Assembly (NCBI RefSeq): GCF_964204865.1
Contig: NC_135259.1
Location: 5,394,001-5,458,000 of the forward strand
DNA from: Styela clava
Lineage: Eukaryota
DNA length: 64,000 nucleotides
Direction of reading: 5' to 3'
Part shown: positions 18,201-45,402 of the stretch, one piece after another
Numbering within the stretch: the first letter of the stretch is position 1
Layout: each line of letters opens with the position of its first letter
Program-made: the position numbers and the translations under genes
The notes under the pieces: model-generated
Seen by the model: the letters and a program-made list of their open reading frames with translations, nothing else
The model's database searches: none
What the model was told of the DNA's origin: nothing

Positions 18201-20527
18201 TGTCCAGGAATTCTTATACTGCCTCCAGTGTCAGTTCCAAATCCTAGTACAGAACCTCCAGCAGCGATAATACATCCTTCGCCCGAAGATGACCAACCTG
18301 GCCCGAATTTCGGATTAAGGGGATGCGATGTCTCTCCATATATGGGATTGCTGGCTTCAAAACTTATAAATGAAAACAAAAATTAAGTTAATGAAAACAC
18401 TATAGATACTTAAATACATTTAGTAACTGCAGAATCATATGAAATGACAACAACGCGTGGCAACGCTCAATTTCAGTCGCATAAATCCTAGCGGTTCCCC
18501 CAACTTTTTGTTCGTGCGGCGCCAAATTAACAGGGAAGAATTTCACCGGCGCACTTACATGAAAAAATCTGCTTTTAAATAAAACTCAATTTTGTGATCG
18601 ATAATGTGTATTTTATGATTTTTAAAGTTTGTAAACACGTAGGCCTATGGAATTAAGAGAAAAGGTCAACACTTCTTCAAAAAGTTGAACAACTGATCTC
18701 TCTCTATTCATTATTCTCCAATTTAACCGTGGGTAACAAAAAAGGCACTTTCTCTCATTGAAGATAGGAGGAATTTACCTCAGCATCATTTGAGGAAGAT
18801 TAGTTTTTGCAAACGGAACCGCTCCACAATGTTTCAAAACTTTCACAAGCACGCAATCTTCTGTAGCGATGTTGTCTAGAAATTTTGATATACCAACAGT
18901 ACTCGCAGAACCCTATTTGAAAAATATCATACCGAAAACTTAAATTGATATCTCGAAATCCACTGTCATTGTGGGTAGTTCGAACAAACGCTGGTTTTTA
19001 CCTGACGCAAGGAAATCTCAAATGTTGAACTATAACCTATTTAATTGAATAAACTATCATCCGTGATGATCTATATCTATATGACTAACTAAAAAAATAT
19101 ATCGAATTTTTTTCTTTATATTATTTAAAATAATATTCCAACTTAAACTCAAATCGTTCCGGATAGGTTTAGTCATTAGTATAATCTAATTACATTCTTT
19201 TTGTATATTTAGAACCTCCCGCTAGAGATGTCACAAACTTGACTGTTCAAAGAATATTATCAATTCTTTTTTCAAATTTTCGTTGAGCAGTTAGACTTGG
19301 CCTTTTTACATTTGTTGGACTAAATTTTAGATTTCATAAAGTTAAAAATTCTGACATTGGAAAAAACCTGAAACATCCAAGCTCTTTACTCGAGAACTCT
19401 TAGAAGGAATGAAATCCAGGTAGAAAAGATATATACTGGGCAATCAAAAATTTAAACAATGATAAAATTGTAACCTTTGTTTGGAAGCATTCTTTTAAAG
19501 TGACCGGAACATTGTGCAACGGCAAATCAAATGCGTTTTTTGAATCTAAATTTTCAGCAGTCGTCAAACAATCTTTCACAACTTCAGTGATGCAGTTCAA
19601 TTTTTTTGTAATTTTCAATGCCTGCAAATTAGTTCATTAAAGAATGTATTATTTATGTTGTTTATGTGCAAATGGTTGAATAATCGAATGCTAGAAAAAC
19701 AAGCCGGTAGGCGCCCACGATCTCCACTGATACATAAGGGGCCGGGCTGCAGTTAACCGTCCCGTCTGCGCAAAATTGCATCTCTAACGACAGCGTGCTA
19801 CAGTGTGCAGACGCTACAGCCAAACACACAGATAGACAGACAGACAGAACGACTGAGAATAAGGGTCTACTAGAGCGGAGATCCAATATATACTGTGAAA
19901 GCATGAAGCAAAAGCAAGGAGAAATTAGTGCATTCCAAATTAGAAGCATATAATGGGATACGCATCGTGGTCTACGTACATAGATGTATATATATCAACG
20001 TATTCCTTGTACAATATCTATAAATATTATTGACTTTTTAACAATTTTCAAAGCGCAGAAGACATGCATAGTAACCCTACTTGACTTCTTGACAATATAT
20101 ATGAATTTACAGACGGCATCAACATTGTTAAATAAACTAACTAATTGAATAAAAAATTCTCCTCACTTTAAATAAAAAGGTTTTGGTTACAAGACTTGGG
20201 TTTGTTTTGTGCAATCTTCCACTTTCGATTAGTTGAGGTCCATTTAGATTTGTAATTGATTTCACAATTTTGTCATTCTGAAATATACAAAAAAATAAGA
20301 CAAAAATGGATTTTAGAGCGTTATTTTAAATTAAAAAAAATTACCAAGTCTTTTGATAAAGTTTCCAATTGATTTTCGTTGTACTGATGTTCTTTTTCGC
20401 GTTTCCTCTTTGCTTTGTTTGAAAGTTTCTTTGATTTACTACCCCTTTCTACAACACGTTGAAGAGATTTCACCAATAAAACAAGCAGTATTGTTAACGA
20501 TATGTATGACAATATCAAAGTCAGCAT
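15249..20527 (-). CDS. FAAH: Fatty-acid amide hydrolase-like amidase, copy B (11 exons, 579 aa)
   Basis: Exons: 20527-20345, 20277-20167, 19621-19475, 18912-18779, 18362-18139, 17458-17313, 16968-16791, 16595-16456, 16206-16002, 15677-15532, 15374-15249. They sum to 1740 nt in frame, with the same intron positions and phases as copy A. Motifs: PVTLKEC, GPGWSSSGEG, GTDTGGSIR, GPMARD. Confidence 0.92.
17892..18127. mobile_element. Long-TIR (foldback-like) MITE, family C
   Basis: GAAGTATGTGAACCGAGATGGTGGACACCGGAACGTAGTATGTGTACCAGGTT is mirrored by AACCCGGTACACATACTACGTTCCGGTGTCCGCCATCTTGGTTCACATACTTC. A related full copy is at 31137-31364, and more diverged or partial copies at ~14715-14832, ~35148-35248 and ~39980-40522. 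Confidence 0.85.
19699..19950. mobile_element. Probable HINE/DINE-like non-autonomous element in a FAAH-B intron
   Basis: GC-richer island starting AACAAGCCGG.., with an internal (GACA)n microsatellite and short subterminal inverted match GATCTCC / GGAGATC. Single copy in the window. Confidence 0.5.
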
Positions 20528-20614
20528 GCTTATTGATTTGAGTATTAATTATAGGCTATGCAACTAGACAGAAGAGATAGGTTGTATTATATCTTAATTC
20601 ACAATATTTTATAG

Positions 20615-22498: not shown

Positions 22499-23360
22499 TA
22501 TTGGACACAAAATGGACCTATTGATCGTTAACACTACTATGTTGTAGTTAGTATTTTTTTCTCGTTGTTAAAAATCATCCTTTTCTTCACCTAATGGGTC
22601 AATTGCTGTCACATTTTCAGTGGTTAAAGATTGCTGTTTCCGCTAGAAAGCTTTTGCTTTTCAATCGTTCCTAAATGTTATATACTATTGTGATATACAT
22701 GATGTAATACCGCTAGGTGGCGCATAATCACCCATATTGTTTTGACCTTATCTCTGCGAGGCTGACGTTCTAACTCTGCACGTGTTTTGTGTTACTTGCT
22801 GCTTGGTCTTCTACTGCTATGGTGTCTTAATTTTAAAATCTTTGGCTCTTACAATAAGGTAGTGTTGTAATGGAAACTTGATTCTTGTTGAAAAAGAACT
22901 AATGGCAGATGCACTACACTAAATTTCCTATGGTATCTAATAGTTCATCCTAACTTTTATACATATGACAACCGTTTTTATTCTGCCAAGCGTGACGGTC
23001 GTCTTCCATTTTGACTCTGCAAACTCCTGCTACGCGACGGTTGTAAGTTTTATGATATTGTGGGCTACTGTACATTAGGTACTGCAAAAGGTACAGTGCG
23101 GCAAAAGATTACATACTAAAGTTATAAGCCGAATCATTTAGTATTTTAATTCACGGTGGCATTAGACGCATGGATAATCATCGTCACAAGACCTGATTAC
23201 GCTAGGACAATGCAGGTACTGGTACTAATGAGGTATGGTACCGTACGGTGGCTGTTACCCAGTTCCAGCCAGATTCGTTCAGGATAAGATGTTTGGGAGA
23301 AATTGTGGGTAAAGTATTTCGTTTCTGAAGTGTCCATATATTTGAGCATTGTTCTCTTGC
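22499..23360 (-). mobile_element. Interspersed element family B (HINE-like)
   Basis: Ends ATTGGACACAAAATGGACCTA and GTGTCCATATATTTGAGCATTGTTCTCTTG match the termini shared with copies at 28786, 31964, 33920, 37918, 51900 and 58742. Confidence 0.7.
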
Positions 23361-23648
23361 TATTTTCGCATTCACAGACATTAAATAGGCAACTGTCGTT
23401 TTTCGACTAGGCCACCTTAAAATTTGCATTACACGTACATTTCTTGTCATTGTTGCCCATACTAAACCCGACCCACCTTTTGCACCCAACGCTATCTTTC
23501 ACCCTTTACAAACTAATTTTGTGGAACTTGAACCAATACTCCAGACTAAGTTGAAAAGAATATTCATTTCCTTCTTTGCGTGTTTTATTTACAAATGACA
23601 AATAAAATCAAAATTATACTGAGCAGTACAGAAGTCACGTTTGCCTTC

Positions 23649-26600
23649 TCAAGGTTCGTCTTCAACTGTGAAAATAAAACAAATATTTTTTATGCAACAG
23701 ACGGACTACACAATGTAACATGCTCCGATGATCCAACATAAGACAAACGGTTAGCTAAAATGACTATTTTAACTTTAAAATTCAAGTTCAATGAAATGTT
23801 TACACATTTGTCATGGATAGGACTTCATACAAGCAACCGGCTTAAATACGACTCGTTTTCTACAAAAACCTACACCCTTTCAACGAGGCATGGCATATAT
23901 AGTATTTAAAAATTAGTCAAGAAGTAAACATAGTATGACTAAGCTTTTGAGCTTCAATGGCAGAGGCACTGTACAAACACATGCAGTCTAATCAATAATC
24001 CGGTTATGCTTCTTTCTAATACAGTATTTTAGTACATAACACTATTGTTTATTAAATAAAAAATACATATTACCAATGGTATCTTGTTTGTTATCTAAAG
24101 AGAGAAAATAATATCACATTAGGAACCTGCAAGATGACTGCATCAACAAATCATTAAATTGAAAAAAACATTGATAGCATGTTTAGGATAAATGAAAGGC
24201 ACCATGTAATAATGCCCGAATAACGATTTAAGATAGATTTCCAGTAAAGGTTCTTTGATATGTGTTATTTAGTTGCTTTTGTGATGTCAAACTATTTAGT
24301 TAGAAAGTTAAAATGGTATTGAAATAGTCATTATTATTCGCTTTACCTTTCATCTGTACCAAAGCCGGGTCTAAAATAGATTAGAAATATAGTTATTCTC
24401 ACGGTATAAATGAAAATAATTGAACCTTGGAAGCATTCGCGAAATGCCCGGACAATACTAAATGCCGCAAATCTTGCCAATCTCGGCAAATTTGAGTAGA
24501 AAATAGATAAACCATTTTATCCAAATTCATAATCTTATTTTATTTGACGCGATGTAAGCATCTGATCAACTCAGTACAAGATTTTGTGAATAATATATTG
24601 TTTGCTCATTCCATCCACACGGCCAAAATGAAATGATTGAGCACTCACAACTTCAAAGGCAGATGTCTGGAAAAGTTGTGGTTTGATATAATAAAATAAC
24701 TGTCGCTCGTAATATATTTTTGCATAGTGCATAAACTAAAAATCAAGTCAGATTTATGTCACATGTTCATTGCCATAACATCGATCATTGCAAATGTGAT
24801 CTTTTGGGCGAACTTTGAACTTTAGGTAATGAACTCCACATTTTATCAGTTTATAGCTCAATTTGACAGTCTGAATTGTTTAGAATTTAGACCATATTGA
24901 GACAAATAGAAAATAGCCATACTCTTATGTTTTAGTATTCAGATACATCATCAATTTCTTTATATTGTGCTACATATATGATAAATGTTTTGTTCACAAT
25001 TAATCATAAGTTTCGAGGCAGAAACTGCCATGACAGAGATAAAAGTGGAAAATCAAAAAATCATGAAATACCTTCAAACATAAATGACCCTGACCATTCT
25101 CCATAGTTTTGAGACGTAATTCCATGTTGTGTGCTACCAACATATCTTGACATTCCATCTATCTTCCAAACTTGGCTATGGCCAGCTTCACCAGCTATTA
25201 AAAATAATAACGAGAATATCGGTCAGAGACCGAAGACTTATCGATCGAAGTTAGGGGATCCAAAACAGCGCTCTTACTCCATAGTGACACCTTGTGTCCC
25301 ATCACTAATTAATTAATAACTCGCTAATTATACATAATTCGCCCAAAATCAATAGGCTTCTGGTCCGAGATATGATGAATGCACATGCAAAATCTGGAGC
25401 AGATTCATTTGCGCTTTCGTGAGATATCGCGTGCATCTAACATACATACAGACAGACAAATACCTATCAACATACTTACCGATTAAAATCGATAAGTAAC
25501 AATTTTGTAGTTCAAAACATGAAAATAAATTTAACTTCAAATAATATTTAAATTTTAATAAATATCATAGTATTCTAAAATAACAAATCATTTCTTTTTA
25601 TCTGAATGGAGCTAAAATGAGAGTATCGGACAGAGACCGAAGACTTATCGATCGAAAGTTGGGGGATCCCCAAAACAGCTCTTTTACTCCATAGTGAGAT
25701 CTTGTGTTCCATCACTAATTAATTAATAACTCGCTAATTATACGACATAATTTGCCCAAAATCGATAGGCTTCTGGTCCGAGATGAGATGAATGCACATG
25801 CAAAATCTGGAGCAGATCCCGCTTTTGTGAGATATCGCGTGCATCTAACAGACAAACGAACAGACATACAGACAGACAAATCAACATACTTACCGATTAA
25901 AGTCGATAAGTAATTACCGATTAAAATCGATAGGTAACAAACGCTTACTCTTTCAATATGACTAGTAATGTATCTTTGTGAGTTTTCACTGACCTGTTAA
26001 CACGCCTTCGTGTATTGCTGCGGCACATATACTGGAATCATCAGTATAGGTTCCTGTTCCCCATAAACTGTACGATTTCGTAGCGCAATCAGAAGGACAT
26101 ACCACAGTAAAAGTTGGGATTGAAAACGATCTTGCTTTGGTTTCACAAGTAATATTACCAACATTTTCTTCGTTGTTCTGAGGTTCTGAAGTATAAAATT
26201 AGCTCGAAGGTCTAATATAAAGGCTTTTCGCCTAAAAATTTTAACAGATGGGTTGTTTTATTTATATCGTAATGTGGTTAACAAGTATATATTTAATTTA
26301 TTTACTACTGAATTGAAAAGATCCACTCCATTTTCCGTAACTTTTCGACCTAATGCCAAATCTTGTTGCACCAGAATAACTATTTCTACCAGAAGATTTC
26401 CAAACAACAATTTCGCCTCCTGTGTCAGCTGAAAAAATGTGATAGCGTTTAGTAATTTCATAACCATATAGCTAAAGATAGTGGTTTTGACAGTTAGTTA
26501 CAATTATTTATATTTTATAGTCAAGTTGGGCTTACAAGGTAATTCAGTGATGCTGTTTAAATACGTTTACATATCAATCTGTACTGAAAAAAGTTACTGT

Positions 26601-29600
26601 TGGACCTGGACGAGCCATCGTGTTACCTTCAATAATTCCATCATGAATGGCAGCTGCACAAATATAGGAGTCGTCAGTATAAATTACGTTCCCCCATAAT
26701 CTGTCGGTATTTGAATTACATCCAATCGGGCAAACCACAGTGAAATGATTTTCATCGTAGGTATTTGCTTGTACCAAACAAGATATCGTTTCTAAAAAGA
26801 ATCATGTAAATATATATGAAGAATTAGGGATTTTTCAAAACAATCTTGTATTTTTAATGTGAATGTTGTACTTACTCCGAGTTTCATTTTCTGTAGACTT
26901 TGAATCTAGAATAAAAAGCAGAAATAGTTGTACAATGTCCAACATGACATAAGAGACCTATTGAAGATTTACTTAATAGTGTTTTAGTATAGTTTTGATA
27001 TATTATTTTGTACGAATATCCTACCATTAAATTTAAAAGAACCGCTCCAAGCTCCATAACTTTTTGAAGTTACTCCATTTCGTGTTGTCCCTAGGTAGCT
27101 GCTTCTTCCGTCCATTTTCCAAACTTGAACTTTACCGCCTTCATCAGCTGAAATAAATCGTCCAGAATCACCATTTTCACATGAAAGTGAACAACACATT
27201 TATAACGACGATATTGAGATGATAAAAAAGACTGAATTAGATCACTGGATGTAGATTGATACCTACAAATTTTATAAATGGTTATTGTTATGTAGGCTAT
27301 ACCTGTATACATCTCAAAGCTGCATAGTAGTAAATGCGAATACGATGGCAATGAATCTGTTACGGTTCAATCACAGCTACTAACAATTTTCATCACAAAT
27401 TCATGTTATTATCCAACCATATTACATTACCTTCAATCACACCATTATGAATAGCAGCTGCGCAGATGTAAGAATCATCTGTGTAAATCTCATTCCCCCA
27501 TAATCTGAAAGTGTTTGACTCACATCCACCCGGGCAGATGACAGTAAAATGATTTTTGTTATAAGTATTCGCTTGTGTGGTGCATTGGACGGTATCTGAA
27601 ATTTGATTGCGAATTGCGCTTTCATTATGCTAAGCTCAAATTTAGAAAACAAATCCACCCACTAATAAAACTGTATACCATACTTACCCTGAACAACTTT
27701 GGGTTCTGAAAAATTAGAAAAAATACAATAGTTACTATTTTTTACAAAAATTGAAAAATCAATTTGTCCAATTAACAAGCCGTTGTTTGTTTTAGAATAC
27801 ATATATACCACGAGATGCCTTACCAGTAAACTGAAAAGAACCGCTCCAACTTCCATAACTTTTTGAAGTAATACCATTTGTTGATGTTCCAGAGTAATTG
27901 CTTCTTCCGTCGGATTTCCAGACATTAACTTGGCCTCCAGAATTAGCTATAAATTACATATTGCTACATGTTTTCCATATTAACCCATGAAAATAAAAGA
28001 CAACTACCACAATATATTTCTGGCGAACGAAAAGCAAATATAATATATAAATGCAATCGATAATATCATTTTCACCTTTAATCCGCACCCTTAGAGTAGT
28101 CTATTCGGACCTCATCTGAGTATTGGCGCCATTAACTTTGGATATGTGAAAGTTTCGTTTGATTAATTAAACAATTTTTATTTAGGGTTTTGGAGTTTTT
28201 TTCATTTTTATTATCAAATAATCATTAGCCAAAAACTACAATGCGCGTTAAAAAATAGAATTATTTTGCGGTTTCTTAGTTTTCCACGAATCGCTTTTCT
28301 TTTAAATTTTTGAAAGAAACAATGAAATATATTTCGGTGCACCATTAAATATAGTTTTGGAAACAGACGACTTTAGTAAATTTGAAGTGGAAACGATATA
28401 TATGTTGTTTTGCTTGTGGTTGATCAGAGACTGTTACACGTATGGAGTATCTATTTCCATTCGTTCCAATATTGCTTATCAAATAGATTCGAATTTGATC
28501 AAATGCATTTAAATGTAATTACTCTTAAGGATAGGATTTTTGAATAATCGTAACTGATGGTGTGTTAAAAACGATCTTATAGTATTTTTACAACAATAAT
28601 GCTGTTGCGTTACCTTCTATTACACCGTCATGAATAGCAGCAGCACAAATGTAAGAATCATCTGTGTAGATTGCGCTTCCCCATAATCTGGAAACATGTG
28701 AATCACATCCACTGGGGCAAACAACAGTGAAACGATCATCATCATAGTTATTTGCTTGTGTGGTACATGATATGGTTTCTAAAATTAATAAGAGAGCAAT
28801 GCGAAATTGTATGGACACAAATAACAAAATGAAATATTTTACCCACAAGTTAGCAAAATCACATCTTGAACGAAGCTGGAACTGTGGAACAGCTACTGTA
28901 TCTTACCAATAATGGTACCCTATTCATGCGTCCCATCTCAACAGGGAATCAAATAACAAATCATTCAAGTCACAACTGCAGTATCAAATCTCTTTCAGTA
29001 TATATCGGCAGCCTACAGTATCTTATCAAATTACGTCCTACTTTCGCTGAGCACGAGTTCCGCTGATTGCGATCACGGAGCCGCATCACATTGCGCAATT
29101 TTCAATTTTGCTGATGCCATACAAAACTTTGTAGTGCAAATCGAATCTCATTCAGCTCACAGAAAATTTTGAAATAATTAAAAGTAATAGCCTTCAAGCG
29201 ATATCAAAATTCTTCTTAACCACTAAAATTTCCAAAGCAATTGGTCTAGTAGGTAAAGAGAAAAGCATTTTTTACAGCAACAACAAGAAAACAATACCAA
29301 CAACTTTATAACATATGTCCACTTCTTTCCCAATAATTACAAAAAGGGGTTTAAATCAGTTGTATCATACTTACGTTGGACATTTTCGGAATCTGGGAAT
29401 TTAGTAAAATAACATACTGGTCAAATATGTGTAATGCCCAAATTATAATTTAACATACAAAACAGTTATCATTGACCTATGTGTTTTATTGAAGTTTTGT
29501 TTCTTTATCTATGGTAAAAATAGTTGAGTAAGGATGCCTTAGTTGATGCAATTTGTTATTTTATCTGTGGTTGGTCGGAAACTGTTACCGATATGAAGCG

Positions 29601-32600
29601 ATGTTATTCAATTTATGAAAATATTGTTTGTCAAATTAAATCTAATCTTATCAAAGTATTTGTTTGTGATTACTCTTAAAATTAAGTCAGATATTTTCAA
29701 ATGATCGCAATTCATGATGTATTGAGAACGATGTTATAGTAGTTTGAAAATAATAATAATAATAATCATAGACCTGTGAATTGAAAAGAACCGGTCCAAC
29801 TTCCATAACTTTTCGATGTGATTGCATTTTTTGATGTTCCAATGTAATTACTTCTTCCGTCGGATTTCCAAACATTAACTTTACCTCCTTCATTAGCTGA
29901 AAATTAATTAAATGGTTGGGGAACAAAAAGTGAAGATTATATAAAGGTGGATTGACAACATCATCTGAATCTTTGCTTAAGTGCAGGATATTCAACTGGC
30001 GTACCCCGCTCCAAATCCGTCCCTTTTGGTATTTCATTCGGACCGCTCTGATTCTGTATTTTGGAGTAGTAGTTCTCGAACTTTTTAAGCCGCGCCTCTT
30101 TTTTAGAAATTGTCAAGTCTCGTGCCCCACTTTCAAAAATTACTAGCTAACAATAACCTAAGAATAACAGAGGGTAAGGCGAAATTAAGTTTTATTCAAA
30201 GAAAACGTCGAAATACTTGGATGGAACGTAAATAAGGAAATAAATGAAACGTTTTGAAATGTAAATATCCAAAATAAGTCGGGAAAGATCAAATCTAACT
30301 ACTAATTTAAAGAGCTTCACGCCCCCTCAAAAAGCCCCCCCCCCCCCTCTAGTGGGGCGCGCTCCATCGTTCGAGAACCACTGTTTTGGAGCAGAATCCA
30401 TCTATTAAAGACTCTTATTTATTGTTTCAGAAGATTTATTCAACTATATACGCGAAGAACCGTAACGTTATAATGAAGTATGCTAATAGTACTGTCTTGA
30501 TTAGCAAATAATCATCAGCCGTAAATTGCAACGCGTGTTAAGGAGGTAGAATTTTATTTGCTTACTCGGTTTTCCAAGAATCGCCTTCCTGTTAACTTTC
30601 CAACCTCAAAGTTAGAGGCACAGAAATGTTTTTAGGCGTGCTGTGAAATATATTTTCTATCAAGACAGGACCCCAGTAATTTTGAAGTTTTGATTTATTA
30701 TCTATGGTGAGAATAGTTGAGTAGAGATGCCTTAGTGGATGCAATTTGTTATTTTATCTGTGGTTGGTCGGAAACTGTTACAGATATGAAGCGATGTTAT
30801 TCAATTTATGAAAATATTGTTTGTCAAATAAAATCTAATTTTATCAAAGTATTTGTATGTGATTACTCTTAAATTAAGTCACATATTGGAATCGATAACA
30901 TCATTTTCATATTCAATCCGGACCTTTAGACTTAGAGTATTCGATTCGGACCTCATCATATTTTTTATTTCAGAGTATTGGCCCCATTAACTTTGGATAT
31001 GGAATTTATTTTTTGATTAAATAAATACCTTTTATATAGTGTTCAAGAGTTTTTTCATCATTCACTCATATTTGCACCTACTTACGTACGAAAATTACTG
31101 TGACGTCATGACAAATGCGAATAGCGCTATTTTGATGGTACTCCCGAAGTATGTGAATCAAAATGCGGGACACCGGAACGTAGTATGTGTACCAGGTTAG
31201 GGTTAGGCCATAATTTATTCCAATTCGCCTTATTTTTGTTTTATTACGAGTTCGGAGACCAGCCAAGTGACGCCCGTAGTATTTGTACCTGAAATCATAG
31301 CCTAACCTTAACCTGGTACACGTACTACGTTCCGGTGTCTTGGTTCACATACGTCGGGAGTACCATTTTAATTATCAAATAATTATCAGCCAAAAACTAC
31401 AATGCGCTTTAAGAATGTAGAATTTTTATTTTTTTTTTGCGGTTTTCAGTTTTCCACAAATTGTTTTTTTTTTTCAACTTTTTAACCTCAAAACTGATGC
31501 ACTGAAATATATTTAGGTGCACTGTGAAGTGTATTTTTGGAAAGAGATGACCCCTGTTATTTTGAAATGGATACGATATGTTCTTTGTGATTAATCAGAA
31601 TATGTTACACGTATGAAATAAAATATTTTAATTTGTACGAATATTGATCATCAAATAAAATCGAATTTGATCAAAAATATGAAAACGTAATTACTCTTAA
31701 AATTAAGGATAAGCTTTTGGAATATTCGTAATTGATGATGTGATAAAATCGTGTTATAGTATTTTGACAATAATGATGATGTTGCGTTACCTTCTATCAC
31801 ACCGTCATGAATAGCAGCAGCACAAATGTAAGAATCGTCTGTGTAGATTGCGCTTCCCCATAATCTAGAAACATGTGAATCACATCCACTGGGACAAACA
31901 ACAGTGAAATGATCTTCATCATAGTTATTTGCTTGTGTAGTACATGATATGGTTTCTAAAATTAGCAAGAGAGCAATGCGAAGTTGTATGGACACAAATA
32001 ACAAAATGAAATATTTTACCCACAATTTTGCAAAATCACATATTGAACGAAACTGGAACTGTGGAACAACACTGTTGGTATCTTACCAAGGACGGTACTC
32101 GGACTGTTCGAACATTCGCAGGTTTATTGAGGATAATAATTCATGCGTCCAGTCTCCACATGGATCGAATTAACGATTGATTCGAGTCGCAACTGTAGTA
32201 TCAAATCTCCTACAGTCCCGACAATCTACCGTACCTCATCAAAAAACTTCTTATTTTCGCTGAGCACGAGTTCCTCTGATTGCGATCACGGGGCCGCATC
32301 ACGGTGCGAAATATTCAATTTGTCACACAAAAATTTAATTAAAGTCAAAAACGAATCTTATACAGCCCAGAGCACATTTTGAAATAAATATAAGTAATTA
32401 ATAGTCTCCTAGCGATATCAAACATTTTTTTACCCACTAATATTTTCAAAAGCAACCGTTCTAGTAGTTAAGGAAAAAGGCATTTTTTTCACAGCAACAA
32501 CAAGAAAAATAAAATTAACAACAACTTTATAACAAAGTGGCCCATGGGTCTACTTCTTTTCCAATATTTACAAAAGTAGTTCTTTTAAAACATTTCAAGT

Positions 32601-35600
32601 AGTTTCAAATCAGATATATTATACTTACGTTGGACAATTTCGGAATCTGGAAATTAAAAAAAAAATACAAGTCAAATATGTATAATGCCTAATTTATAAT
32701 TCAACATGCAAAACAATTATCATTGATCTATGTATTTATTGCAGTTTAAAAATTAAAGACCTGTGAATTGAAAAGAACTGCTCCAACTTCCATAACTTTT
32801 TGATGTGATTCCATTTCTTGATGTTCCATAGTAATTGCTTCTTCCGTCGGATTTCCAAACATTAACTTTGCCTCCTGCATTGCCTCCTGTAAAATTAAAT
32901 ATAGCTCCATGCTTTTTTAAAAATTTATTTAAACAAAGGGCAAATAATATCATCTTAATCCTTGCCTTAGTGAAAATAATTACTCTTCGAATTAAGGCTT
33001 AGATTTCAAATGATCGTAATTAATGATTTGTTTAAAACGATGTTTGGTAGTTTGATAATAAGAATGATCTTGCGTTACCTTCTATCACACCGTCATGAAT
33101 AGCCGCAGCACAAATGTAAGAATCATCTGTGTAGATTACGCTTCCCCATAATCTGGAAACATGTGAATCACATCCACTGGGACAAACAACAGTGAAATGA
33201 TTTTCATCATAGTTATTTGCTTGTGTGGTGCAAGATGTTGCTTCTGGAAAATGAATCTTTACATTGATTATCTTTGTCTTGTGTTAGAAAAACTTAAACT
33301 CGTTCCAAATGTGTGTTTCACTTACGCTGATTGTTTCTGGAATCTATAGAATAAAATAATAGGTATGAATATGTATCGTCACGTCATCGCTTTCTTTAGA
33401 GTAGAATTATTTAATATATAACTCACCAGTAAATTGAAACGAGCCACCCCAACTTCCATAACTTTTTGAAGTGATTCCATTTCTAGATGTTCCAGAGTAA
33501 CTGCTTCTTCCATTAGATTTCCAAACTGTAACGTCACCCCCATTAGTAGCTAAAAATAAAATATGTTAAGCAGGGGATAACATTGGTGAATAAGGCATCG
33601 GTTCCTTAACTTAATTACATTACAACAGTATGTGTTTTCTGTCTTGTGCTTTTAATTTTATGCTTAATATAATGTGTAACTAAATATATGTCTATATATT
33701 TAATTAGAAAAAATTTTTTGATATAGCATGGCGTTACCTTCAATCACTCCGGCGTGAATTGCTGCTGCACAAATGTAAGAATCATCTGTGTAAACTATAG
33801 TTCCCCACAATCTGGAGGTGTGTGAGTCGCATCCGCTCGGACAAGTTGCAACGAAATGATTTTGATTGTTGCTATTTGCCTGTTTTGTGCACAGAACTGT
33901 TTCTGCAAAAAACAAAAAAACATAGAGAGCAATGCTCAAATATGTGGACACGAAATCCATTTTTTTCAAAACAGCAATAACAACAAGTGGGCAATTTTCA
34001 AATATAAGAACACGTCGGCCGAACATAATATTTTACCCGCAAGAAGCTTGTCAAAGTGTGGCGGCGATCGCCCATAATAGCGTCTGCGACAACGAACTCA
34101 CTAAAGACTGGAAAAATCTATGTTTCAACTATTGGCGTGATTGTGTCGTCGCAGAGACCTTAATTTTGGATGTACAAGTTTGGGATCAGGTATGACATAT
34201 GCAATTATTTTTACGCAACGGCCACTGATATTACACTACACTAGCCCCCGATTTCCTACTGTCCCAATAACCCATAGGTCCACTTCCTATTGAACAATGC
34301 TCAAATATATGAACACGAAAGCGATAACGAAGTAGTGTGGGTATGTAATTTTCCACAGTACCAGTACCGTAGGTTTCCCGACTTCCACTGACCACCAAAT
34401 TGCTAAGATTGGAATTGTGGATCGGAACCACAAAGTGCACAATTTTTATTATTGATGGCGTTATCACGCATAAAAAAAACGAATTCCCTAAAGGCCGCAG
34501 AAATTTTAAAATAAATAATAGCTTTCTAGCGACAAACACAATCTTTAACCACCTAAAATTGTAAACAATTGGCACAGCAGAAGAGAGAAGGAAGCAATTT
34601 TGTCATAACAACAGCAAAAGGAATTCTAATAACAACAACAAAATATTACTAAAATTATCTATAAGTTCATTTCGTGTTCAACAAGAAAAAATACCGTCAA
34701 CAACAGCAACAATATATTAACAAACCGATACATAGGTTCACTTCATGTCTAAAAACATGAAATTTTAACGCAAATATTGATAAAATATTAACAGCAGAAA
34801 TAAAAACATGGACAAAAATACTCGTACAACCCACGAGAATGATATCAGTACGAGTTTGCTGTTTTGTTCGAAAAGCTGATTGACTTGGGATTTCGGGCAT
34901 TTTTCCTGCCAACATATTGAACAATGGTCCCGACGGACCAAACTCACCTAAATTGATTGCTCCACAAAATTTCCAAAAATACTCATTATCATTTATATAT
35001 ACTGTGGTTTACCATTGTAACAATATTTTCCTATTTCTCAACAACTTTAATTGCCAATTCTAATTCATATGTCAATTTTGATCGCTATATTGATAGGCAA
35101 TTTGATTTCACTGATTGAAAAACAAATAGTTCAAAATTGGTATTCCACGAGTATGCGCACCAAGATGTCTCACAACCTGAACTCTGACTTTGTACACAAC
35201 CTGAGTTCAGGTTGTGCGCCATCTTGGTGCGCATACTTCAGGAGGTCCTAAAAATTAGTCTTAAAATTGCCCCCATTGTCCGCACTTGCGATTGAATTTT
35301 CAAGAGTTGTTTGCTATTTAACCGGATTTATTTTGAATTTGCCCACAGAAAATAAAAATAATACCTTCAAGTTCAACCTTTGGTGAGTCTAAATAGAGAA
35401 TAAAATTTAAAGTAAGAATTAATAAATGTAAAAAAATTCATTCATGCATTACATATATATTACAAATGTCAGCAACAGGTAGAATAATATTTCCATATAA
35501 TTTTATAGTTATCTACTCACCAGTAAAATGAAAAGATCCTCTCCAATACCCATAGCTTTTTGAGGTGATTCCATTTTTTGTGGTACTAGAGTAAGCGCTC

Positions 35601-36396
35601 CTTGAGCCAGATTTCCATACTTTTACATAGCCTCCATCAACTGGGTGAAGTTTACATAAAAAGACGTTTCAGGTGATTTCGAAAAGGATAACATTGTTAA
35701 TTATTGTTTTACCATTTCCGTGCTAGTTTTAGTTTAAATTGGTATTGAATAAAATAGTAATATAAATACACATCTTCATCTTTACATTATCTTTATAATG
35801 ATTTTCACCTGTCAACTTTCCTTCATGGATTGCTGCTGCGCAGATGTATGAGTCGTCTGTGTATACTGTTGTTCCCCAGAGCCTGTTCGTGAACGCATCG
35901 CAACCCGCCGGGCAGTGGATTCCGAATGATTGACCCTGATGATCCCTTGCCATGTGTTTGCATGTTGTAATGCCATCATTTGCAACTGAAAGTTGAAATG
36001 AATTAATAATCAAAGGTATGCATTTCATTAAATTAGACAGAGCATAATTTGTAGCAAATAAAATTTTAGTTTTATCAAATTGTAAGCTCGATATCTGGAC
36101 CATTCGACAAATGAAAAACTGACTATTTTTCAAACAGCAGCATCATTGTCGATTCCAAAAATCACGGCATACCTTGTTTGTATACAATTTATAGGAAGTT
36201 TTTGAACAATTGAAAGTTTTTTGAGCATGCCATATAGCAACGACACGATAAATCAAAATCCAACTCCTCAACTCGCATGTAAACTAGTATATAAATTTAT
36301 TTATATAAAGTATTTGTACTCACTTGTAAAACAATTTACAACATTGGCTGTCGTCAGTATACCAAATAAAAATATAACCTTTGTCTTCATCTCCAT
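23649..36396 (-). CDS. Secreted protein of 8 tandem LCCL domains (26 exons, ~867 aa)
   Basis: Signal-peptide exon 36396-36324 (MEMKTKVIFLFGILTTANVVNC). Each LCCL domain is split into exon A (C..CPxGC..LWG..YTDDSYICAAAIHxG) and exon B (GGxVxVWKxxGRSxYxGxxxNGITSKSYGxWxGSF): 35985-35809/35640-35521; 33902-33738/33549-33427; 33243-33079/32886-32761; 31955-31791/29896-29774; 28778-28614/27946-27824; 27595-27431/27147-27025; 26791-26627/26428-26306; 26185-25994/25194-25072. Linker microexons: 35388-35365, 33343-33326, 32646-32629, 29392-29375, 27705-27688, 26905-26876. Tail exons: 24370-24347, 24094-24074, 23665-23649 (VEDEP*), with AATAAA about 60 nt downstream. All introns are phase 1 and the total is 2604 nt. 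The tail exons are the least certain part. Confidence 0.9.
25225..25938 (-). mobile_element. Two tandem HINE/DINE-1-like elements (25225-25500 and 25632-25938)
   Basis: Two highly similar copies of ~280-300 bp. Each has subterminal inverted repeats ACTTATCGAT/ATCGATAAGT, a terminal hairpin ACTTACCGATTAAAATCGATAAGT and a (GTCT/GTAT)n microsatellite, which is the architecture of Helentron-associated interspersed elements. Confidence 0.75.
28786..29335 (+). mobile_element. Family B element in LCCL intron; co-duplicated copy at 31964-32565
   Basis: Starts AAGAGAGCAATGCGAAATTGTATGGACAC and ends ATGTCCACTTCTTTCCCAATA. It is colinear with 31964-32565. Confidence 0.75.
30067..30383. mobile_element. 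Non-autonomous hAT MITE in LCCL intron
   Basis: TIRs TAGTAGTTCTCGAAC / GTTCGAGAACCACTG with an exact 8-bp TSD TTTTGGAG (30059-30066 and 30384-30391). Confidence 0.88.
31137..31364. mobile_element. Family C long-TIR MITE
   Basis: GGTACTCCCGAAGTATGTGAA ... TTCACATACGTCGGGAGTACC. It is absent from the paralogous intron segment near 28200. Confidence 0.85.
33920..34685 (+). mobile_element. Two head-to-tail family B elements
   Basis: GAGAGCAATGCTCAAATATGTGGACACG at ~33925, then ATAGGTCCACTTCC directly followed by a second CAATGCTCAAATATATGAACACG at ~34295. The pair ends AAGTTCATTTCGTGTTCAAC at ~34680. Confidence 0.65.
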
Positions 36397-37917
36397 GTAA
36401 CAAGATAGCAATGCAGTAAACTTAATTTGTTGATGCAGTTTTAACCACATTCCAAACATCTGCAGCTTAAAATTGCAGCACAAATGTAGTTACAGCAATA
36501 TAGGTGAGTACGTTATGTCAGAGTTGGACCAAATATCACAGGTTCGTTTTGGATTTAGATTCAGGCTTGAACGTGAATATTTCATAGCTTGGCGGGGAAA
36601 GTTTTTGCTCAAGGCGTTTCAGTAATGCGCACTATACCTTGTTCACGTCCTGTCAATAAGCCTTAGTTGCCATTTAATTGGCTTGGATACGATCTACATG
36701 AAGATAAAAAGTTAGTGTTGTTACCCCGCTTACGAGCGTCAATCCCATCGGGTATTTCTGTAATATATATTTTAATATTATACACTCAATTGTTTCAACC
36801 CTATCCCTATCAAACATTCTATGCCCCAAAACAGAAAACTATCAAAAAAGTCTGCAGTGAAATTGTTATTACAATGCACGACACTTGTCTTTCCAGTTCG
36901 ATTCAGCCTCAGAACTTCAGTTTTCATTCAAGCGCGTGACCTAATTTTTCTAAATATTCATCAAATTACTTACTTGATGAGGTTTCGATAAATGTTCTTC
37001 TGTTTACTGACCACGAAAACAGCGTCAAGTTGAACGGCAAATGTTTTACATCTTTGTGAATATATTCAGAATTATTAAACAATTTCTTTGGCGACGATAA
37101 TTTGAAAATATTAGCCTATATTTCTTTGTGGCCAAATTTAATGCCCAGTCGTACATATCATGTATGAAAGAGCAACTATTTAATTACCATTGCATAAATT
37201 TTTTTGTGTTCAGAAATCGAGTCTTATTAGTAAATAACATCTTCTCATTTTTGAGACTTTGATACATATTTGTCTCACTTCTACTGGTCCAACATTTTAC
37301 AACATTTCATAATCAAAAAATTAATATTCTGATTGCAATATTTTTCAAATGTGCAAATGCCAATGACAAAGTCCCATTGAGTCTTCTTATCTTTCATTTT
37401 AAACATAGATTCAACCATTTTAATTCCAACGTCACATCAATGACCTTTATTAAATTAACAACCCCATTATTATTTTTTTACTAAAAAAAATCCTGGTGCA
37501 TTTATTCATTTACATATGTAACCATGCAAAATTTTTGAACATTATTTATAGAGTTCCAGTCGCCGATAGTTTTTGAATTTGAAAGAGCTTTTATACTTTT
37601 TTTTTTAGTATTGCCTTACAGAAATTTTGGTAAAATCATAAGTTTTATTGTAGAATCCCTCCAGTTGTTTAACAGCCTACTTTATATTATGTTTGATCTT
37701 TGAAATTTGTACTTCTTGCATAATGTCGTTTCAACCTGTTTGCTATTTTATTTTTTTGATTAGTAACAATTACATCTCCATTTTTTCTGTAAAACATTCG
37801 TCCAAATCTATTTTCATTTTATCTTTGAAAATTATTCTCTGAGTATCTTTTTGCTCGCGAAGGGGACATATGGATGGTTTTGTTAAGCTGTTGTTATTGT
37901 CAGTATTATTCTTGGTA

Positions 37918-38930
37918 GTTTTGGACACGGAGTGGACCTATGGTTTTGTTATTATGTTGTTGTTGTTCTTGTTGTTGGTATTTTCTTCTTGTTGTTGTAA
38001 AAAATCGCTTTTCAATGGACCAATTGTTTTGAAATTTTCATTGGTGAAAAATTATTGTTGTCGCTATTACTTTTATTTATTTTAAAAAAAATTGTGGGTT
38101 TTATGGAATTCGGTTTTCTTTTGGACGTTTTGTGTGGTGATGTCAACAAAATTGAAATTAATTGTAGAGGTTCCGCGCCCGCATGTCAGGGGATCTCGTT
38201 TTTAGCGGAAGTCGGAAGTTTTTTACAGTGTTCGGTAGACTACGGTACGCCGATGTAAAAAAAAATCAAAAAACAGTTGTGGCACGTATCCATTGGCATT
38301 TCAATATACGGGTGAAACTGGAAGCATGAATCACCATAGCCACAGGACCTAATACAGTCTAATACAGTCCGGGTATCGTTTCCGGTACCCTGAAACAGTT
38401 ACTGGTAATGTGTTCCACAGTTCCAGTTCAGGATATAATTTTCGGGGAATTGTTGGTTAATAATGTTTTTTTTTGCCTTTCGTTGTCATATATTGCAGGA
38501 TGGCATTCTTGTTCTTCTTGTTGTGGAAATATCGTTTTTCTTTTTAACTTTTTGGTCAATTACTTTGAAATCATCAAAATTAAGAAATTGCGCACCGTGT
38601 GGGGGTTCCGCGACCGCATTTCCGCGATCTGATGCGCAGCAAAGTCGAAGGTTTTATGATAAGTTTGACAAACTACTGCTACTGTGAAAGATTGGATACT
38701 ATACAGTTGTGATCGAATCATTTGGTATTTCGATTCATGTTGAATCGTCATGAATGAATCATCATGACATGCGAAAGCTGGGACAGTCCGGGTACCGGTA
38801 CTGCTGGTAAGTTACGGTACCTAGCTGTTTCGCAGTCCCAACTTCGTTCATGGTATGGTTTGGCGGGAATTGTGGTTAAACAATTTCGTTTTGGTCTTTG
38901 TATCCCTATATTCGAACATTGCTCTCTTGT
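37918..38930 (-). mobile_element. Family B element (long, probably composite)
   Basis: Starts TTGGACACGGAGTGGACCTA, continues with a (TTG)n tract and GGACCAATTGTTTTGAAATTTTCA, and ends TATATTCGAACATTGCTCTCTTGTT. Confidence 0.7.
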
Positions 38931-40050
38931 TGAAGAAAACAAAGACCTAATTTAAACAACTTTTCTGTCTTGTACACATTATCATGGTCTTTACTGCGAA
39001 GTTTCGTTTTATTTCAAGGTTGTTTCATTATATTTTATTAATTATCTTTAGGATCGGCCTATCCATAAATGGCTAATCTGTGTCATAATTTGGGATTATG
39101 GCTAAATTAAATGTATTTTGGGGGTCAATAGTATTTCATAGTGGTCTGCATGTGAACAAAACCAATTTCAAAACTCAAAATGTTTTAGTTTAAATTATCC
39201 ATGCTTGATCCGAGTGTTCTTAACCACGGTGACGTCATCATATTTTTTTATGTATCATTTTTATTTTACTACAAGGTCAAATTTTATTTGTATGAATCTG
39301 TTGGTATTTGAAAACGAAGTAGGCTATTCTGAACGCGCGAGCAACCTTTTCTGGCTCATAATAAACAAACAAAGATACCAGACAGCACGCGATCAAATAC
39401 TCTTCGATAAAACGAATATAACTTCACTTCAAAAGCCCACTCTTGTTTTGTTTTAAAGGTGACGTAAAGCTCATCCAAAAGAGAACTCTTTTGCTCGCAT
39501 ATCGATCGTGTGTTGATCACAGCGTTAAAAGTGAGAAACTTTTTCTCAAAATTTTCTAAAATTTCTCTTTTCTTACCGGCGTATGGTCGGACTACTGAAC
39601 TGAAAATATATGGAACGATCTTCTCTCTCGTTTTGCGTTGTCTCGCCGCGGGATCATTTGATCGCCGCCATCTTGGCATTCATGCTTCCAAGGTTTCTTC
39701 GTGTTGCATATGGTTTTGGCCAGTTTTCGTCTATTTTACTACCCATTGCGCCGCATATGGATGTATATGCGACACTTTGTGAGTATTCAAATACAATTGT
39801 ATTCGAGTTGCATTTTTAGAGCCTGATGTGGATCTCGTTATTGAAAAAAATTGGTCGTTCAGACGATTGCACAATAGATATATAAGTGGAAACAATTGTT
39901 TTTGCCTGGTGACATAAAATGCAATAACCTCCACCGGGAAAATTTCACTAGTAGTATGGGACGAAGAGAAATTTAGTTGATACTGCCGTAGTCTGTGTAC
40001 CAGGTTGGGGTTAGGCCATCCCTTTATTCTGACTTTTCTTATTTTAGTTC

Positions 40051-45300: not shown

Positions 45301-45402
45301 TTGATAACATGCAACAATCGAAATTGTATCTTGGATTCAGTCAAATATATTTGTTAAAAATAATTTATAAGTTACTCTTATTATACGAAACACAGTTTTC
45401 AG

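What the first reader, a model, noticed from the sequence alone, without database searches (positions are those of the whole stretch)
23649..36396. Secreted protein made only of eight tandem LCCL domains
Seen: signal peptide, 8 complete LCCL domains and a short acidic tail. Known: animal LCCL domains usually occur singly within mosaic proteins (cochlin, vitrin, CRISPLD1/2, DCBLD1/2, Limulus factor C) and are linked to innate defence and matrix binding. Inference: an LCCL-only octamer would be a multivalent binder or agglutinin, an architecture I do not recognise from characterised proteins.
Basis: partly seen in the sequence, partly recalled or inferred. Interest (0 to 1): 0.8.

Follow-up and report, generated by a model that had tools for sequence, protein, structure and literature searches.

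The report
Secreted eight-LCCL-domain protein, sea squirt
This is a real, expressed sea-squirt gene for a secreted chain of eight LCCL domains and nothing else; similar unstudied chains occur in many other animals, so the design is unexplored rather than unique.

Summary
On the minus strand, 26 coding exons (36459/36396 to 23649) encode a leader, eight complete LCCL domains and a 20-residue tail. Each domain is split into two phase-1 exons, and most are joined by 18-30 nt linker micro-exons.

All 888 residues of RefSeq [quoted passage not shown] map exactly onto these exons. Spliced contigs from 4 runs (3 studies) confirm the 3' half.

The modelled domains match the cochlin LCCL structure (TM 0.86). 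No other Pfam domain is present.

The architecture is not unique. Leader-plus-LCCL-only arrays of 5-13 domains occur in other ascidians, amphioxus, frogs, newt, caecilian, lungfish and a brachiopod; rotifer hits have several LCCL stretches, one with a chitinase domain on record. All carry uninformative or automatic names. Eight literature searches found no study of such arrays.

New points:
- A recent 3.18 kb internal duplication.
- An 8- versus 9-domain difference between this assembly and older RefSeq isoforms. The 9-domain junction is seen in RNA contigs.
- Purifying selection on the repeats.
- An alternative, non-acidic 3' end.

The function (multivalent binder or agglutinin) is inferred from cochlin and akhirin LCCL, not shown. 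The scan noted this same stretch once more (s1-816039), not on other DNA.

The parts
36324..36459 (-). Exon 1: leader/signal peptide.
   Evidence: Residues 1-45 of P0159 match exactly. Sequence read. Hydrophobic core VIFLFGILTTA.
35809..35985 (-). LCCL domain 1, N-half exon
   Evidence: PF03815 E 9.1e-14; exact match to P0159 47-104
35521..35640 (-). LCCL domain 1, C-half exon
   Evidence: PF03815 positions 62-96
35365..35388 (-). Linker micro-exon L1 (24 nt, SPKVELE)
   Evidence: Found from P0159; AG/GT borders and exact match. No RNA was laid here.
33738..33902 (-). LCCL domain 2, N-half exon
33427..33549 (-). LCCL domain 2, C-half exon
33326..33343 (-). Linker micro-exon L2 (18 nt)
   Evidence: Predicted; exact match to P0159
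33079..33243 (-). LCCL domain 3, N-half exon
32761..32886 (-). LCCL domain 3, C-half exon (donor GTC)
32629..32646 (-). Linker micro-exon L3 (18 nt)
31791..31955 (-). LCCL domain 4, N-half exon
29774..29896 (-). LCCL domain 4, C-half exon
   Evidence: An RNA contig covers 29778-29880.
29375..29392 (-). Linker micro-exon L4 (18 nt)
   Evidence: Joint 29375>28778 seen in run X5.
28614..28778 (-). LCCL domain 5, N-half exon
   Evidence: Joint to 5C seen in 4 of 4 runs.
27824..27946 (-). LCCL domain 5, C-half exon
27688..27705 (-). Linker micro-exon L5 (18 nt)
   Evidence: Its joints were not listed.
27431..27595 (-). LCCL domain 6, N-half exon
   Evidence: Joint 27431>27147 seen in 4 of 4 runs.
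27025..27147 (-). LCCL domain 6, C-half exon
26876..26905 (-). Linker micro-exon L6 (30 nt, SKSTENETR)
   Evidence: Present in spliced contigs of 4 of 4 runs; read.
26627..26791 (-). LCCL domain 7, N-half exon
26306..26428 (-). LCCL domain 7, C-half exon
25994..26185 (-). LCCL domain 8, N-half exon, including its own 11-residue linker
25072..25194 (-). LCCL domain 8, C-half exon
24347..24370 (-). Tail micro-exon T1 (24 nt, PALVQMK)
   Evidence: 22 letters lie between joint 25072>24096 in X1, X2 and X7. They were located at 24349-24370 with 1 mismatch..
24074..24094 (-). Tail exon T2 (21 nt). In the RNA contigs the exon runs on past the donor to at least 23900, giving stop TAG at 24044-24042.
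23649..23665 (-). Last coding exon T3 of the RefSeq model (VEDEP, stop TGA at 23651-23649)
   Evidence: Exact match to P0159 885-888. It lies outside the stretch laid with reads. AATAAA at 23589.
28320..32900 (-). Two copies of a roughly 3.18 kb tandem duplication unit (C-half + linker + N-half): 3C-L3-4N and 4C-L4-5N
   Evidence: Direct repeats with spacing 3177-3213 and 83-93% identity, plus the C-half pair at 2987 and 90% identity. dS 0.13-0.16 between the paired exons; introns 86-88% identical.

Best explanation
What is shown: this is one expressed Styela clava gene, RefSeq LOC120338417. Its product is a leader peptide followed by eight LCCL modules joined by 8-12-residue linkers, with a 20-residue tail and no other domain.

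What is inferred: the protein is secreted as a flexible beads-on-a-string chain. It acts as a multivalent extracellular binder in which each LCCL module binds a microbial-surface or sulfated-glycan ligand, as single LCCL modules of cochlin and akhirin do. Eight modules in cis would turn weak single-site binding into high-avidity cross-linking, such as agglutination or entrapment of microbes, or tethering them to mucus or tunic matrix.

Valency appears to change quickly, through unequal crossing-over of a [C-half, linker, N-half] unit (8- versus 9-domain forms). It may also change through skipping of phase-1 exons (RefSeq isoforms with 7-9 domains).
For: Gene and architecture (shown):
- 8 of 8 N-halves and 8 of 8 C-halves hit PF03815.
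- 888 of 888 residues of RefSeq isoform X1 map onto 26 AG/GT exons, all internal junctions in phase 1.
- Spliced contigs in 4 of 4 laid runs from 3 studies join 5N>5C, 6N>6C>L6>7N>7C>8N>8C. Three of 4 join 8C>T1>T2.
- Pfam finds only LCCL and the overlapping, related Rxt3 model; every other listed family has 0 significant stretches.
- The AlphaFold model has eight folded modules (block pLDDT mostly 70-90), linkers with pLDDT under 50 and pTM 0.29. The best PDB match is the cochlin LCCL structure 1JBI (TM 0.86, rmsd 1.8 A, 37% identity). 1JBI is also the only PDB hit by sequence.

Modules kept functional:
- Four Cys and the YTDDSxICAAAIHxG motif are invariant in all 8 domains.
- dN/dS between repeats is 0.05-0.58.

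Secretion:
- Hydrophobic leader.
- In the relatives' sequences read, a hydrophobic leader directly precedes the first LCCL.
- No hydrophobic C-terminus.

Ligand binding by LCCL (literature):
- Cochlin LCCL aggregates and entraps Gram-negative and Gram-positive bacteria (PMC7526977, passages).
- Akhirin LCCL directly binds bacteria (PMC12839204, abstract and one passage).
- Cochlin binds sulfated heparan sulfate, probably through its LCCL domain (PMC9333281, passages).

Changing valency:
- The 3.18 kb duplication.
- 9-domain RefSeq isoforms.
- The 9-domain-specific junction FQFP|ETISC appears in contigs of X5 and X7. Its C-half is absent from this window and from this genome, where the best match is 90%.
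Against: - No binding, localisation or induction data exist for this protein or for any LCCL-only array that I could find.
- The tissues of the RNA runs are hidden behind coded names.
- The mature protein is acidic overall (pI 5.3; domains 3-8 pI 4.6-6.9). That does not favour polyanion (GAG or LPS) binding by charge, although domains 1-2 are basic (pI 9.0 and 7.9).
- The signal peptide is judged only by hydropathy, and with the RefSeq start the hydrophobic core begins at residue 28.
- The 5' half of the gene (exon 1 to 4N) has no RNA evidence of my own, only the exact match to the RefSeq model.
- The 8- versus 9-domain difference could partly reflect assembly differences, because I could not see the older assembly.
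Confidence: 0.5

Rival explanations
1. Structural role. The chain is a building block or cross-linker of an extracellular material (tunic, pharyngeal or endostyle mucus, or an adhesive). It binds the animal's own glycans rather than microbes.
For: - The distribution favours mucus-coated or filter-feeding aquatic animals: ascidians, amphioxus, amphibians, lungfish, a brachiopod and rotifers.
- Amphibian relatives carry Pro/Thr/Ser-rich linkers, and one is auto-named 'mucin-2-like'.
- An LCCL protein is expressed in a flatworm adhesive organ (PMC6745481, passage).
- Cochlin itself is a matrix protein that binds GAGs (PMC9333281).
Against: - The linkers here are short (8-12 residues) and not mucin-like, and there are only 4 N-glycosylation sequons.
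- There are no cross-linking motifs and no unpaired Cys within the domains (4 Cys per domain).
- Nothing localises the protein.
Confidence: 0.3
2. Polyprotein precursor. The chain is cut in its linkers to release single LCCL modules, the way aggrecanase frees the LCCL of cochlin. The monomers would be the active species.
For: - Cochlin and akhirin LCCL act after proteolytic release (PMC7526977, PMC12839204).
- The linkers are modelled as disordered and exposed (pLDDT under 50).
- Four of the seven inter-domain linkers share a motif, DSxxxQQ (DSRNNQQ, DSEIVQQ, DSENVQQ) or the similar EPKVVQD.
Against: - No dibasic or furin-type site occurs in 6 of 7 linkers; only L6 has ...TRK.
- Alternative isoforms drop linkers altogether (X4 and X3 versus X2). 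That fits spacers better than obligatory cleavage sites.
Confidence: 0.08
3. Artefact. The model fuses several genes, or the locus is a decaying tandem array that makes no such protein.
For: - The array is repetitive.
- The 5' half was not checked with reads by me.
- Some unspliced contigs exist, for example 24067-25101 in X1 and 28610-29251 in X2.
Against: - There is no stop or frameshift in any of the 26 exons, and all junctions are phase-compatible.
- Single contigs of 1123-1167 nt span six exons.
- dN/dS is well below 1.
- The next gene downstream is an unrelated amidase that starts near 20548.
Confidence: 0.02

Closest known systems
Cochlin (COCH) and vitrin/akhirin LCCL domain
   Same: Same fold and family: PF03815, 37% identity to 1JBI, TM 0.86. 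Both are extracellular. The LCCL of these proteins binds bacteria and sulfated glycans (PMC7526977, PMC12839204, PMC9333281). This is the basis of the functional inference.
   Different: Cochlin and vitrin have one LCCL plus vWA domains, and the LCCL acts after proteolytic release. This protein has eight LCCL domains, no vWA and no evident cleavage sites.
CRISPLD1/2 (Lgl1)
   Same: Secreted proteins with more than one LCCL; two C-terminal LCCL domains are described in a passage of PMC3927609. Some amphioxus LCCL arrays are auto-named 'CRISPLD1'.
   Different: Pfam finds no CAP/SCP domain here, and there are eight LCCL domains rather than two.
Uncharacterised LCCL-only arrays in other animals, such as Ciona LOC100175297, Clavelina, Phallusia, S. 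clava LOC120347949, Branchiostoma, Rana, Ranitomeya, Lissotriton, Rhinatrema, Protopterus and Lingula
   Same: Same design: leader, then 5-13 LCCL domains separated by short linkers, and little or nothing else.
   Different: In the quick domain tree, d1-d7 of this gene form their own clade (SH-aLRT 93). That marks it as a lineage-specific internal expansion. The Ciona/Phallusia/Clavelina gene instead shows position-by-position orthology of its domains, partly shared with S. clava LOC120347949 (quick tree, many forks unresolved). Amphibian arrays have longer Pro/Thr/Ser linkers. Amphioxus proteins carry a non-LCCL C-terminal stretch of about 175 residues.
Apicomplexan LCCL proteins (CCp/LAP)
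   Same: Extracellular, putatively adhesive proteins named after LCCL (PMC11285972, PMC2211786 listing).
   Different: Those are mosaics that combine LCCL with many other domains (SRCR, PLAT and others are on record for coccidian hits). This protein has LCCL only.

Membership tests
LCCL domain family (Pfam PF03815) | Match to the family profile above the curated cut-off | tested here: met
   P0159 scores 604.9 bits with 8 stretches. Exon by exon, 8 of 8 N-halves and 7 of 8 C-halves exceed 22.6 bits; 8C scores 20.5.
LCCL domain family (Pfam PF03815) | Four conserved cysteines and the YTxDSxICxAAxHxG core motif (named from recall; conservation tested here) | tested here: met
   Invariant columns C8, C24, C28, C48 and Y-T-D-D-S-x-I-C-A-A-A-I-H-x-G are present in all 8 N-half exons.
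LCCL domain family (Pfam PF03815) | LCCL fold as in the solved cochlin domain | tested here: met
   The AlphaFold model (mean pLDDT 73.6) matches 1JBI with TM 0.86, rmsd 1.8 A over 99 columns, E 3.3e-8.
LCCL domain family (Pfam PF03815) | Extracellular or secreted context | tested here: inconclusive
   There is a hydrophobic leader, and the relatives read have leaders. No signal-peptide predictor was available and the start codon is uncertain (36459, 36396 or 36390).
Cochlin/vitrin family | vWA domains after the LCCL | tested here: not met
   No vWA hit in Pfam.
CRISPLD family | N-terminal CAP/SCP domain | tested here: not met
   No CAP hit in Pfam.
DCBLD family | CUB and discoidin domains plus a transmembrane segment | tested here: not met
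   Neither domain is found. Gaps between LCCL stretches are 8-12 residues, which leaves no room for such domains. The tail is hydrophilic.
Gel-forming or secreted mucins | Long Pro/Thr/Ser-rich O-glycosylated regions | tested here: not met
   Linkers are 8-12 residues and proline is 1.7% of the mature protein.
LCCL-only tandem arrays (unnamed group seen in databases) | Leader followed by 5 or more LCCL domains with short linkers and no other domain | tested here: met
   8 domains cover 85% of P0159, with gaps of 51, 10, 8, 8, 8, 8, 12, 11 and 20 residues. In the same analysis, 15 of the 18 other proteins show 5-13 domains with no non-leading gap over 45 residues. The 3 exceptions have a C-terminal stretch of 157-175 residues.

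The most novel reading that the evidence does not exclude
LCCL-only chains may be an old, overlooked class of secreted pattern-recognition agglutinins in mucus-coated aquatic animals (ascidians, amphioxus, amphibians, lungfish, brachiopods, rotifers). No amniote or teleost array appeared among the roughly 30 named hits. Their valency would be tuned individually by copy-number-variable repeats and exon skipping, and the antibacterial single LCCL of cochlin and akhirin would be a remnant of them. In Styela, the 8- versus 9-domain alleles would then be standing variation in immune avidity.
Probability: 0.25. Interest if true: 0.65.

Novelty: new variant of a known kind. Interest (0 to 1): 0.42.

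Why it matters
LCCL is a small module whose ligand and mechanism remain unclear, even in cochlin (deafness DFNA9, antibacterial entrapment). A natural protein made only of LCCL modules, in graded numbers (7, 8 or 9 here; 5-13 elsewhere), is a clean system for asking what LCCL binds and how valency matters.

It also shows that a whole group of LCCL-only proteins across invertebrate chordates and amphibians sits in databases as 'uncharacterized', 'mucin-2-like' or 'CRISPLD1'.

The locus is also a tidy example of domain-number evolution. Symmetric phase-1 exons allow a 3.18 kb unit to duplicate in frame.

Tried and rejected
1. My first guess for the tail was an exon at acceptor 24969 (QYKEIDDVSEY*). 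I rejected it because no joint uses it. Contigs go 25072 > 24370-24347 > 24094, and the RefSeq model agrees.

2. My micro-exon scan found L2-L6 but missed L1 and proposed a false 60-nt exon at 34096-34037. L1 was located only from the database protein.

3. I first took the 'goes back 953' joint (28780>27828) for a repeat artefact. It spells exactly the FQFP|ETISC junction of the 9-domain isoforms, and that C-half is absent from the window and from the genome.

4. The 4C>L4 joint was not listed, because the tool masks the ATT repeat at 29740-29777. The 5C>L5>6N joints were also not listed, so L5 rests on the RefSeq match only.

5. High read depth at 25100-25900 does not come from this gene. It is a roughly 275-nt interspersed repeat.

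6. Rfam found nothing in 23000-37000.

7. The careful tree did not finish in 300 s, so only the quick tree is reported, with 62 of 126 forks open.

8. Literature: 8 searches found nothing on LCCL-only arrays. One search was badly framed (1,682 papers held any two of the terms); of the 25 listed, only one held 'LCCL'.

9. The tissue or stage of the RNA runs could not be learned because their names are coded.

Exons were searched piece by piece, and whole-protein analyses used the database protein P0159.
Full report
**What is there**

The window is AT-rich (GC 0.29-0.38) and has no N. A motif scan and stop-to-stop reading of the minus strand between 37000 and 23000 show eight copies of the LCCL N-half (CPxGC...RLWG...YTDDSxICAAAIH) and eight of the C-half (GG.V.VWK...NGITSKSYG.W.GSF.F).

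Each half sits in its own exon. Every acceptor and donor leaves phase 1.

Translated exon by exon:
- 8 of 8 N-halves hit Pfam LCCL (PF03815) at E 1.8e-15 to 2.6e-13, over profile positions about 4-58 of 96.
- 8 of 8 C-halves hit positions 60-96 at E 1.3e-6 to 5.4e-4. Seven of 8 exceed the 22.6-bit cut-off alone; 8C scores 20.5 bits.
- The four cysteines and the YTDDSxICAAAIHxG core are invariant in all eight domains.

So the eight domains are real and complete.

**Identity of the gene**

I never joined the exons. A profile of the eight N-half exons was searched against 1.84 billion representative proteins. It gave 2948 hits at E<=1e-3, of which 68 were at E<=1e-30.

The best hit (927.7 bits, 9 stretches, 980 aa) is XP_039262352.1, 'uncharacterized protein LOC120338417 isoform X4 [Styela clava]'. 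This independently confirms the species named in an earlier scan note.

A word search with that protein returned further isoforms:
- X1: 888 aa
- X2: 984 aa
- X3: 980 aa
- X7: 787 aa

Isoform X1 (P0159) maps onto the window residue for residue, 888 of 888. It uses 26 coding exons, all with AG/GT borders:
- exon 1;
- 16 half-domain exons;
- six linker micro-exons (L1 of 24 nt; L2-L5 of 18 nt each; L6 of 30 nt);
- three tail exons.

RefSeq starts at 36459, and a third ATG lies at 36390.

Pfam on the whole protein finds 8 LCCL stretches (E 2.7e-186) plus the overlapping, related Rxt3 model. Every other listed family has 0 significant stretches, which are summed noise on a repeat.

**Transcription**

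13 public runs hold parts of 23649-29900. Nine guessed-RNA runs hold 0.17-0.38 of the words, and four runs hold 0.91-0.94.

I laid Logan contigs of X1, X2, X5 and X7 (3 studies) on 23900-29899. The intron-less joints with CT..AC ends (GT..AG on the minus strand) were as follows:

| Joint | Runs |
|---|---|
| 5N>5C | 4 of 4 |
| 6N>6C | 4 of 4 |
| 6C>L6>7N | 4 of 4 |
| 7N>7C | 4 of 4 |
| 7C>8N | 4 of 4 |
| 8N>8C | 4 of 4 |
| 8C>T1>T2 | 3 of 4 |
| L4>5N | 1 of 4 |

- Single contigs of 1123 and 1167 nt span six exons.
- The runs are labelled RNA only by guess. The spliced form is what shows they carry cDNA.
- Not seen: the 4C>L4 joint (the tool masks the ATT repeat at 29740-29777) and the 5C>L5>6N joints.
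- Unspliced contigs also exist, for example 24067-25101 in X1.
It rests on the exact RefSeq match.

**The 3' end**

My first tail guess (acceptor 24969) is wrong. The RefSeq tail is DPALVQMKDNKQDTIVEDEP, with 6 acidic and 3 basic residues.

In X1 and X5, however, the contigs spliced to T1 continue past the T2 donor (24074) to at least 23900-23933. That gives ...DTIGNMYFLFNKQ with stop TAG at 24044-24042 and an AATAAA at 24053.

Whether T2>T3 is also used could not be seen, because T3 lies outside the laid stretch. Both ends leave a hydrophilic tail without a membrane anchor.

**Shape**

An AlphaFold2 model of P0159 (18-sequence alignment A3) has mean pLDDT 73.6 and pTM 0.29. It shows eight folded modules; the seven inter-domain linkers, the leader and the tail are under pLDDT 50. 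This is beads on a string with no fixed inter-domain packing.

- Foldseek's best PDB match is the NMR structure of the cochlin LCCL domain, 1JBI (E 3.3e-8, TM 0.86 on the target, rmsd 1.8 A, 37% identity).
- It is followed by Rxt3 subunits of the SIN3/Rpd3L complexes.
- By sequence, 1JBI is the only PDB hit (E 7.8e-18).

The mature protein (from residue 44) is about 92 kDa with pI 5.3. It has 4 N-x-S/T sequons and 34 Cys in the full 888 residues: 32 in the domains and 2 in the leader. Domains 1-2 are basic (pI 9.0 and 7.9) and domains 3-8 are acidic to neutral (4.6-6.9).

**How the array evolved**

- Domains 3, 4 and 5 are 87-91% identical to each other. Domains 1 and 8 are the most divergent, at 49-60%.
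- A tandem duplication with about 3.18 kb spacing copies the unit [C-half, linker, N-half]: 3C-L3-4N corresponds to 4C-L4-5N. The repeats are 83-93% identical in DNA.
- The paired exons differ at dS 0.13-0.16, and the paired introns are 86-88% identical.
- Across all repeat pairs with a usable estimate, dN/dS is 0.05-0.25 for N-halves and 0.13-0.58 for C-halves. One pair, 6C-7C, gave no valid dS. The modules are therefore under purifying selection and not decaying.

**An 8- versus 9-domain difference**

- The older RefSeq isoforms X2-X4 carry a ninth domain, inserted between 4N and 4C, with a C-half ending ...FQFP.
- Contigs of X5 and X7 contain a joint that spells the junction specific to that form, FQFP|ETISC. 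In one search it is listed as 'goes back 953' with two letters between.
- That C-half end is absent from the window (0 matches with up to 1 mismatch). The 40-residue C-half has no match better than 90% anywhere in this 377 Mb assembly.

I read this as an allelic copy-number difference between individuals. I could not inspect the older assembly, so an assembly effect is not excluded.

RefSeq also lists a 7-domain isoform and isoforms lacking single linkers. Skipping of phase-1 exons makes these possible. I did not verify them with reads.

**How common is the architecture?**

- Of the 150 best hits, 29 have 5 or more LCCL stretches.
- The 20 representatives whose names I looked up include: Lissotriton (11 domains), Rhinatrema (8), Clavelina (6 and 7 stretches), Branchiostoma belcheri, Phallusia, three Ciona genes, Protopterus (5), Engystomops, Ranitomeya, Lingula (12) and Rotaria. 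Four come from unnamed metagenome or Logan sources.
- adds B. lanceolatum (1627 aa, 13 domains), Rana temporaria (10), Pelobates, Adineta (a chitinase domain is also on record) and a second S. clava gene, LOC120347949 (7 domains).

With an HMM built from this gene's eight domains, I examined 19 proteins. In 16 of them the domains plus gaps of at most 45 residues (apart from the leader) account for the whole protein. The exceptions are the two amphioxus proteins, with a C-terminal stretch of about 175 residues, and the Pelobates protein, with 157.

The source names are 'uncharacterized', 'LCCL domain-containing', 'mucin-2-like', 'CRISPLD1' or 'dendrite reproteinration'.

In this genome, PF03815 gives 49 matches. 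Eight belong to this gene, and several other clusters of 2-7 hits lie on C14, C9, C16 and C13.

A quick domain tree (131 domains, 93 columns, 62 of 126 forks open; the careful search did not finish) shows the following:
- d1-d7 of this gene form one clade (SH-aLRT 93), with d8 beside it.
- The Ciona LOC100175297, Phallusia and Clavelina-b gene shows position-wise orthology, partly shared with S. clava LOC120347949.
- Each amphibian array is mostly species-specific.

This gene therefore looks like a Styela-lineage expansion beside an older, conserved ascidian 7-LCCL gene.

**Literature**

Eight full-text searches found no paper on LCCL-only or tandem-LCCL animal proteins, and none that names these loci:
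- LCCL with ascidian
- LCCL domains with tandem
- LCCL with Ciona
- LCCL with amphioxus
- tunicate names
- four locus or accession ids
- cochlin, LCCL, bacteria and innate immunity
- LCCL with mucus

What I read:
- PMC7526977 (passages): free cochlin LCCL aggregates and entraps Pseudomonas and Staphylococcus.
- PMC12839204 (abstract and one passage): akhirin LCCL directly binds bacteria.
- PMC9333281 (passages): cochlin binds sulfated heparan sulfate, probably through its LCCL domain; the authors call LCCL possibly lectin-like.
- PMC6745481 (passages): an LCCL protein is expressed in a flatworm adhesive organ.
- PMC3927609 (passages): CRISPLD2 has two LCCL domains.
- PMC11285972 (passages) and PMC3269628 (one passage): nothing relevant to arrays.

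**Mechanism**

Shown: one spliced gene; eight intact LCCL folds kept under constraint; flexible short linkers; no other domain; a hydrophobic leader; changing domain number.

Inferred: the protein is secreted and works through multivalency. Eight weak LCCL sites in cis would give high-avidity cross-linking of a repetitive ligand.
- Ligand on microbes (agglutinin or entrapment, as for cochlin and akhirin LCCL): I put this at about 0.45-0.5.
- Ligand in the animal's own mucus, tunic or adhesive matrix: about 0.3.
- A polyprotein cut into monomers: about 0.08. Six of 7 linkers lack basic cleavage motifs, and isoforms drop linkers.
- An annotation artefact: about 0.02.

Against a simple charge-based binding of polyanions, the protein is acidic overall.

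**Verdict**

The architecture is unstudied but widespread and already annotated, so this is a new variant of a known kind rather than something categorically new.

Its value lies in three things:
- a natural LCCL-only system;
- an overlooked family across non-amniote chordates and some other invertebrates;
- a clear case of in-frame domain-number evolution with an apparent 8/9-domain polymorphism.

Noticed in passing
window 25230-25910 (intron between 8N and 8C): Two copies of a roughly 275-nt interspersed repeat. The genome has at least 2694 first-look candidates, and the 40 scored copies elsewhere are 92-96% identical. Read depth there is in the thousands in all 4 runs, so the element is abundantly transcribed somewhere. 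There is no Rfam match.
   Followed up: partly
window 7600-12630 and 15890-20550, minus strand: Two tandem amidase-family genes (PF01425; E 3.4e-30 and 1.8e-27 on single exons) lie downstream of the LCCL gene. Each starts with a hydrophobic N-terminal segment. They resemble fatty-acid amide hydrolase, a name I give from recall.
   Followed up: partly
window 28847-29401 (intron between L4/4C and 5N): Contigs cover 28847-29251 at raised depth (81-181 in bin 29100-29299). One contig in X1 splices 28847 to the 5N acceptor at 28778. This may be an intronic repeat or an alternative upstream exon or promoter. It remains unexplained.
   Followed up: no
window 29489-29680 and 30682-30873: A 192-nt direct repeat (94% identical, spacing 1193) lies inside and beside the long 4N>4C intron, the place where the 9-domain form carries its extra unit. 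It may be a scar of gain or loss of that unit.
   Followed up: no
G000 C14:9745674-9758513; C9:2080312-2092918; C9:17171207-17175188; C16:19015515-19019328; C16:20235516-20242967; C16:20366023-20369872; C16:20939419-20942829; C13:2637603-2641983: Other clusters of 2-7 LCCL exon hits in the same genome. At least one further LCCL-only gene exists (LOC120347949, 7 domains).
   Followed up: partly
window 36460-47800: About 11 kb with no recognised gene separates the LCCL gene (minus strand) from the CCP x20 gene (plus strand). The two secreted single-domain polymers are arranged head to head, as noted in s1-816039. One open stretch there (40042-40485) gave no Pfam hit.
   Followed up: no
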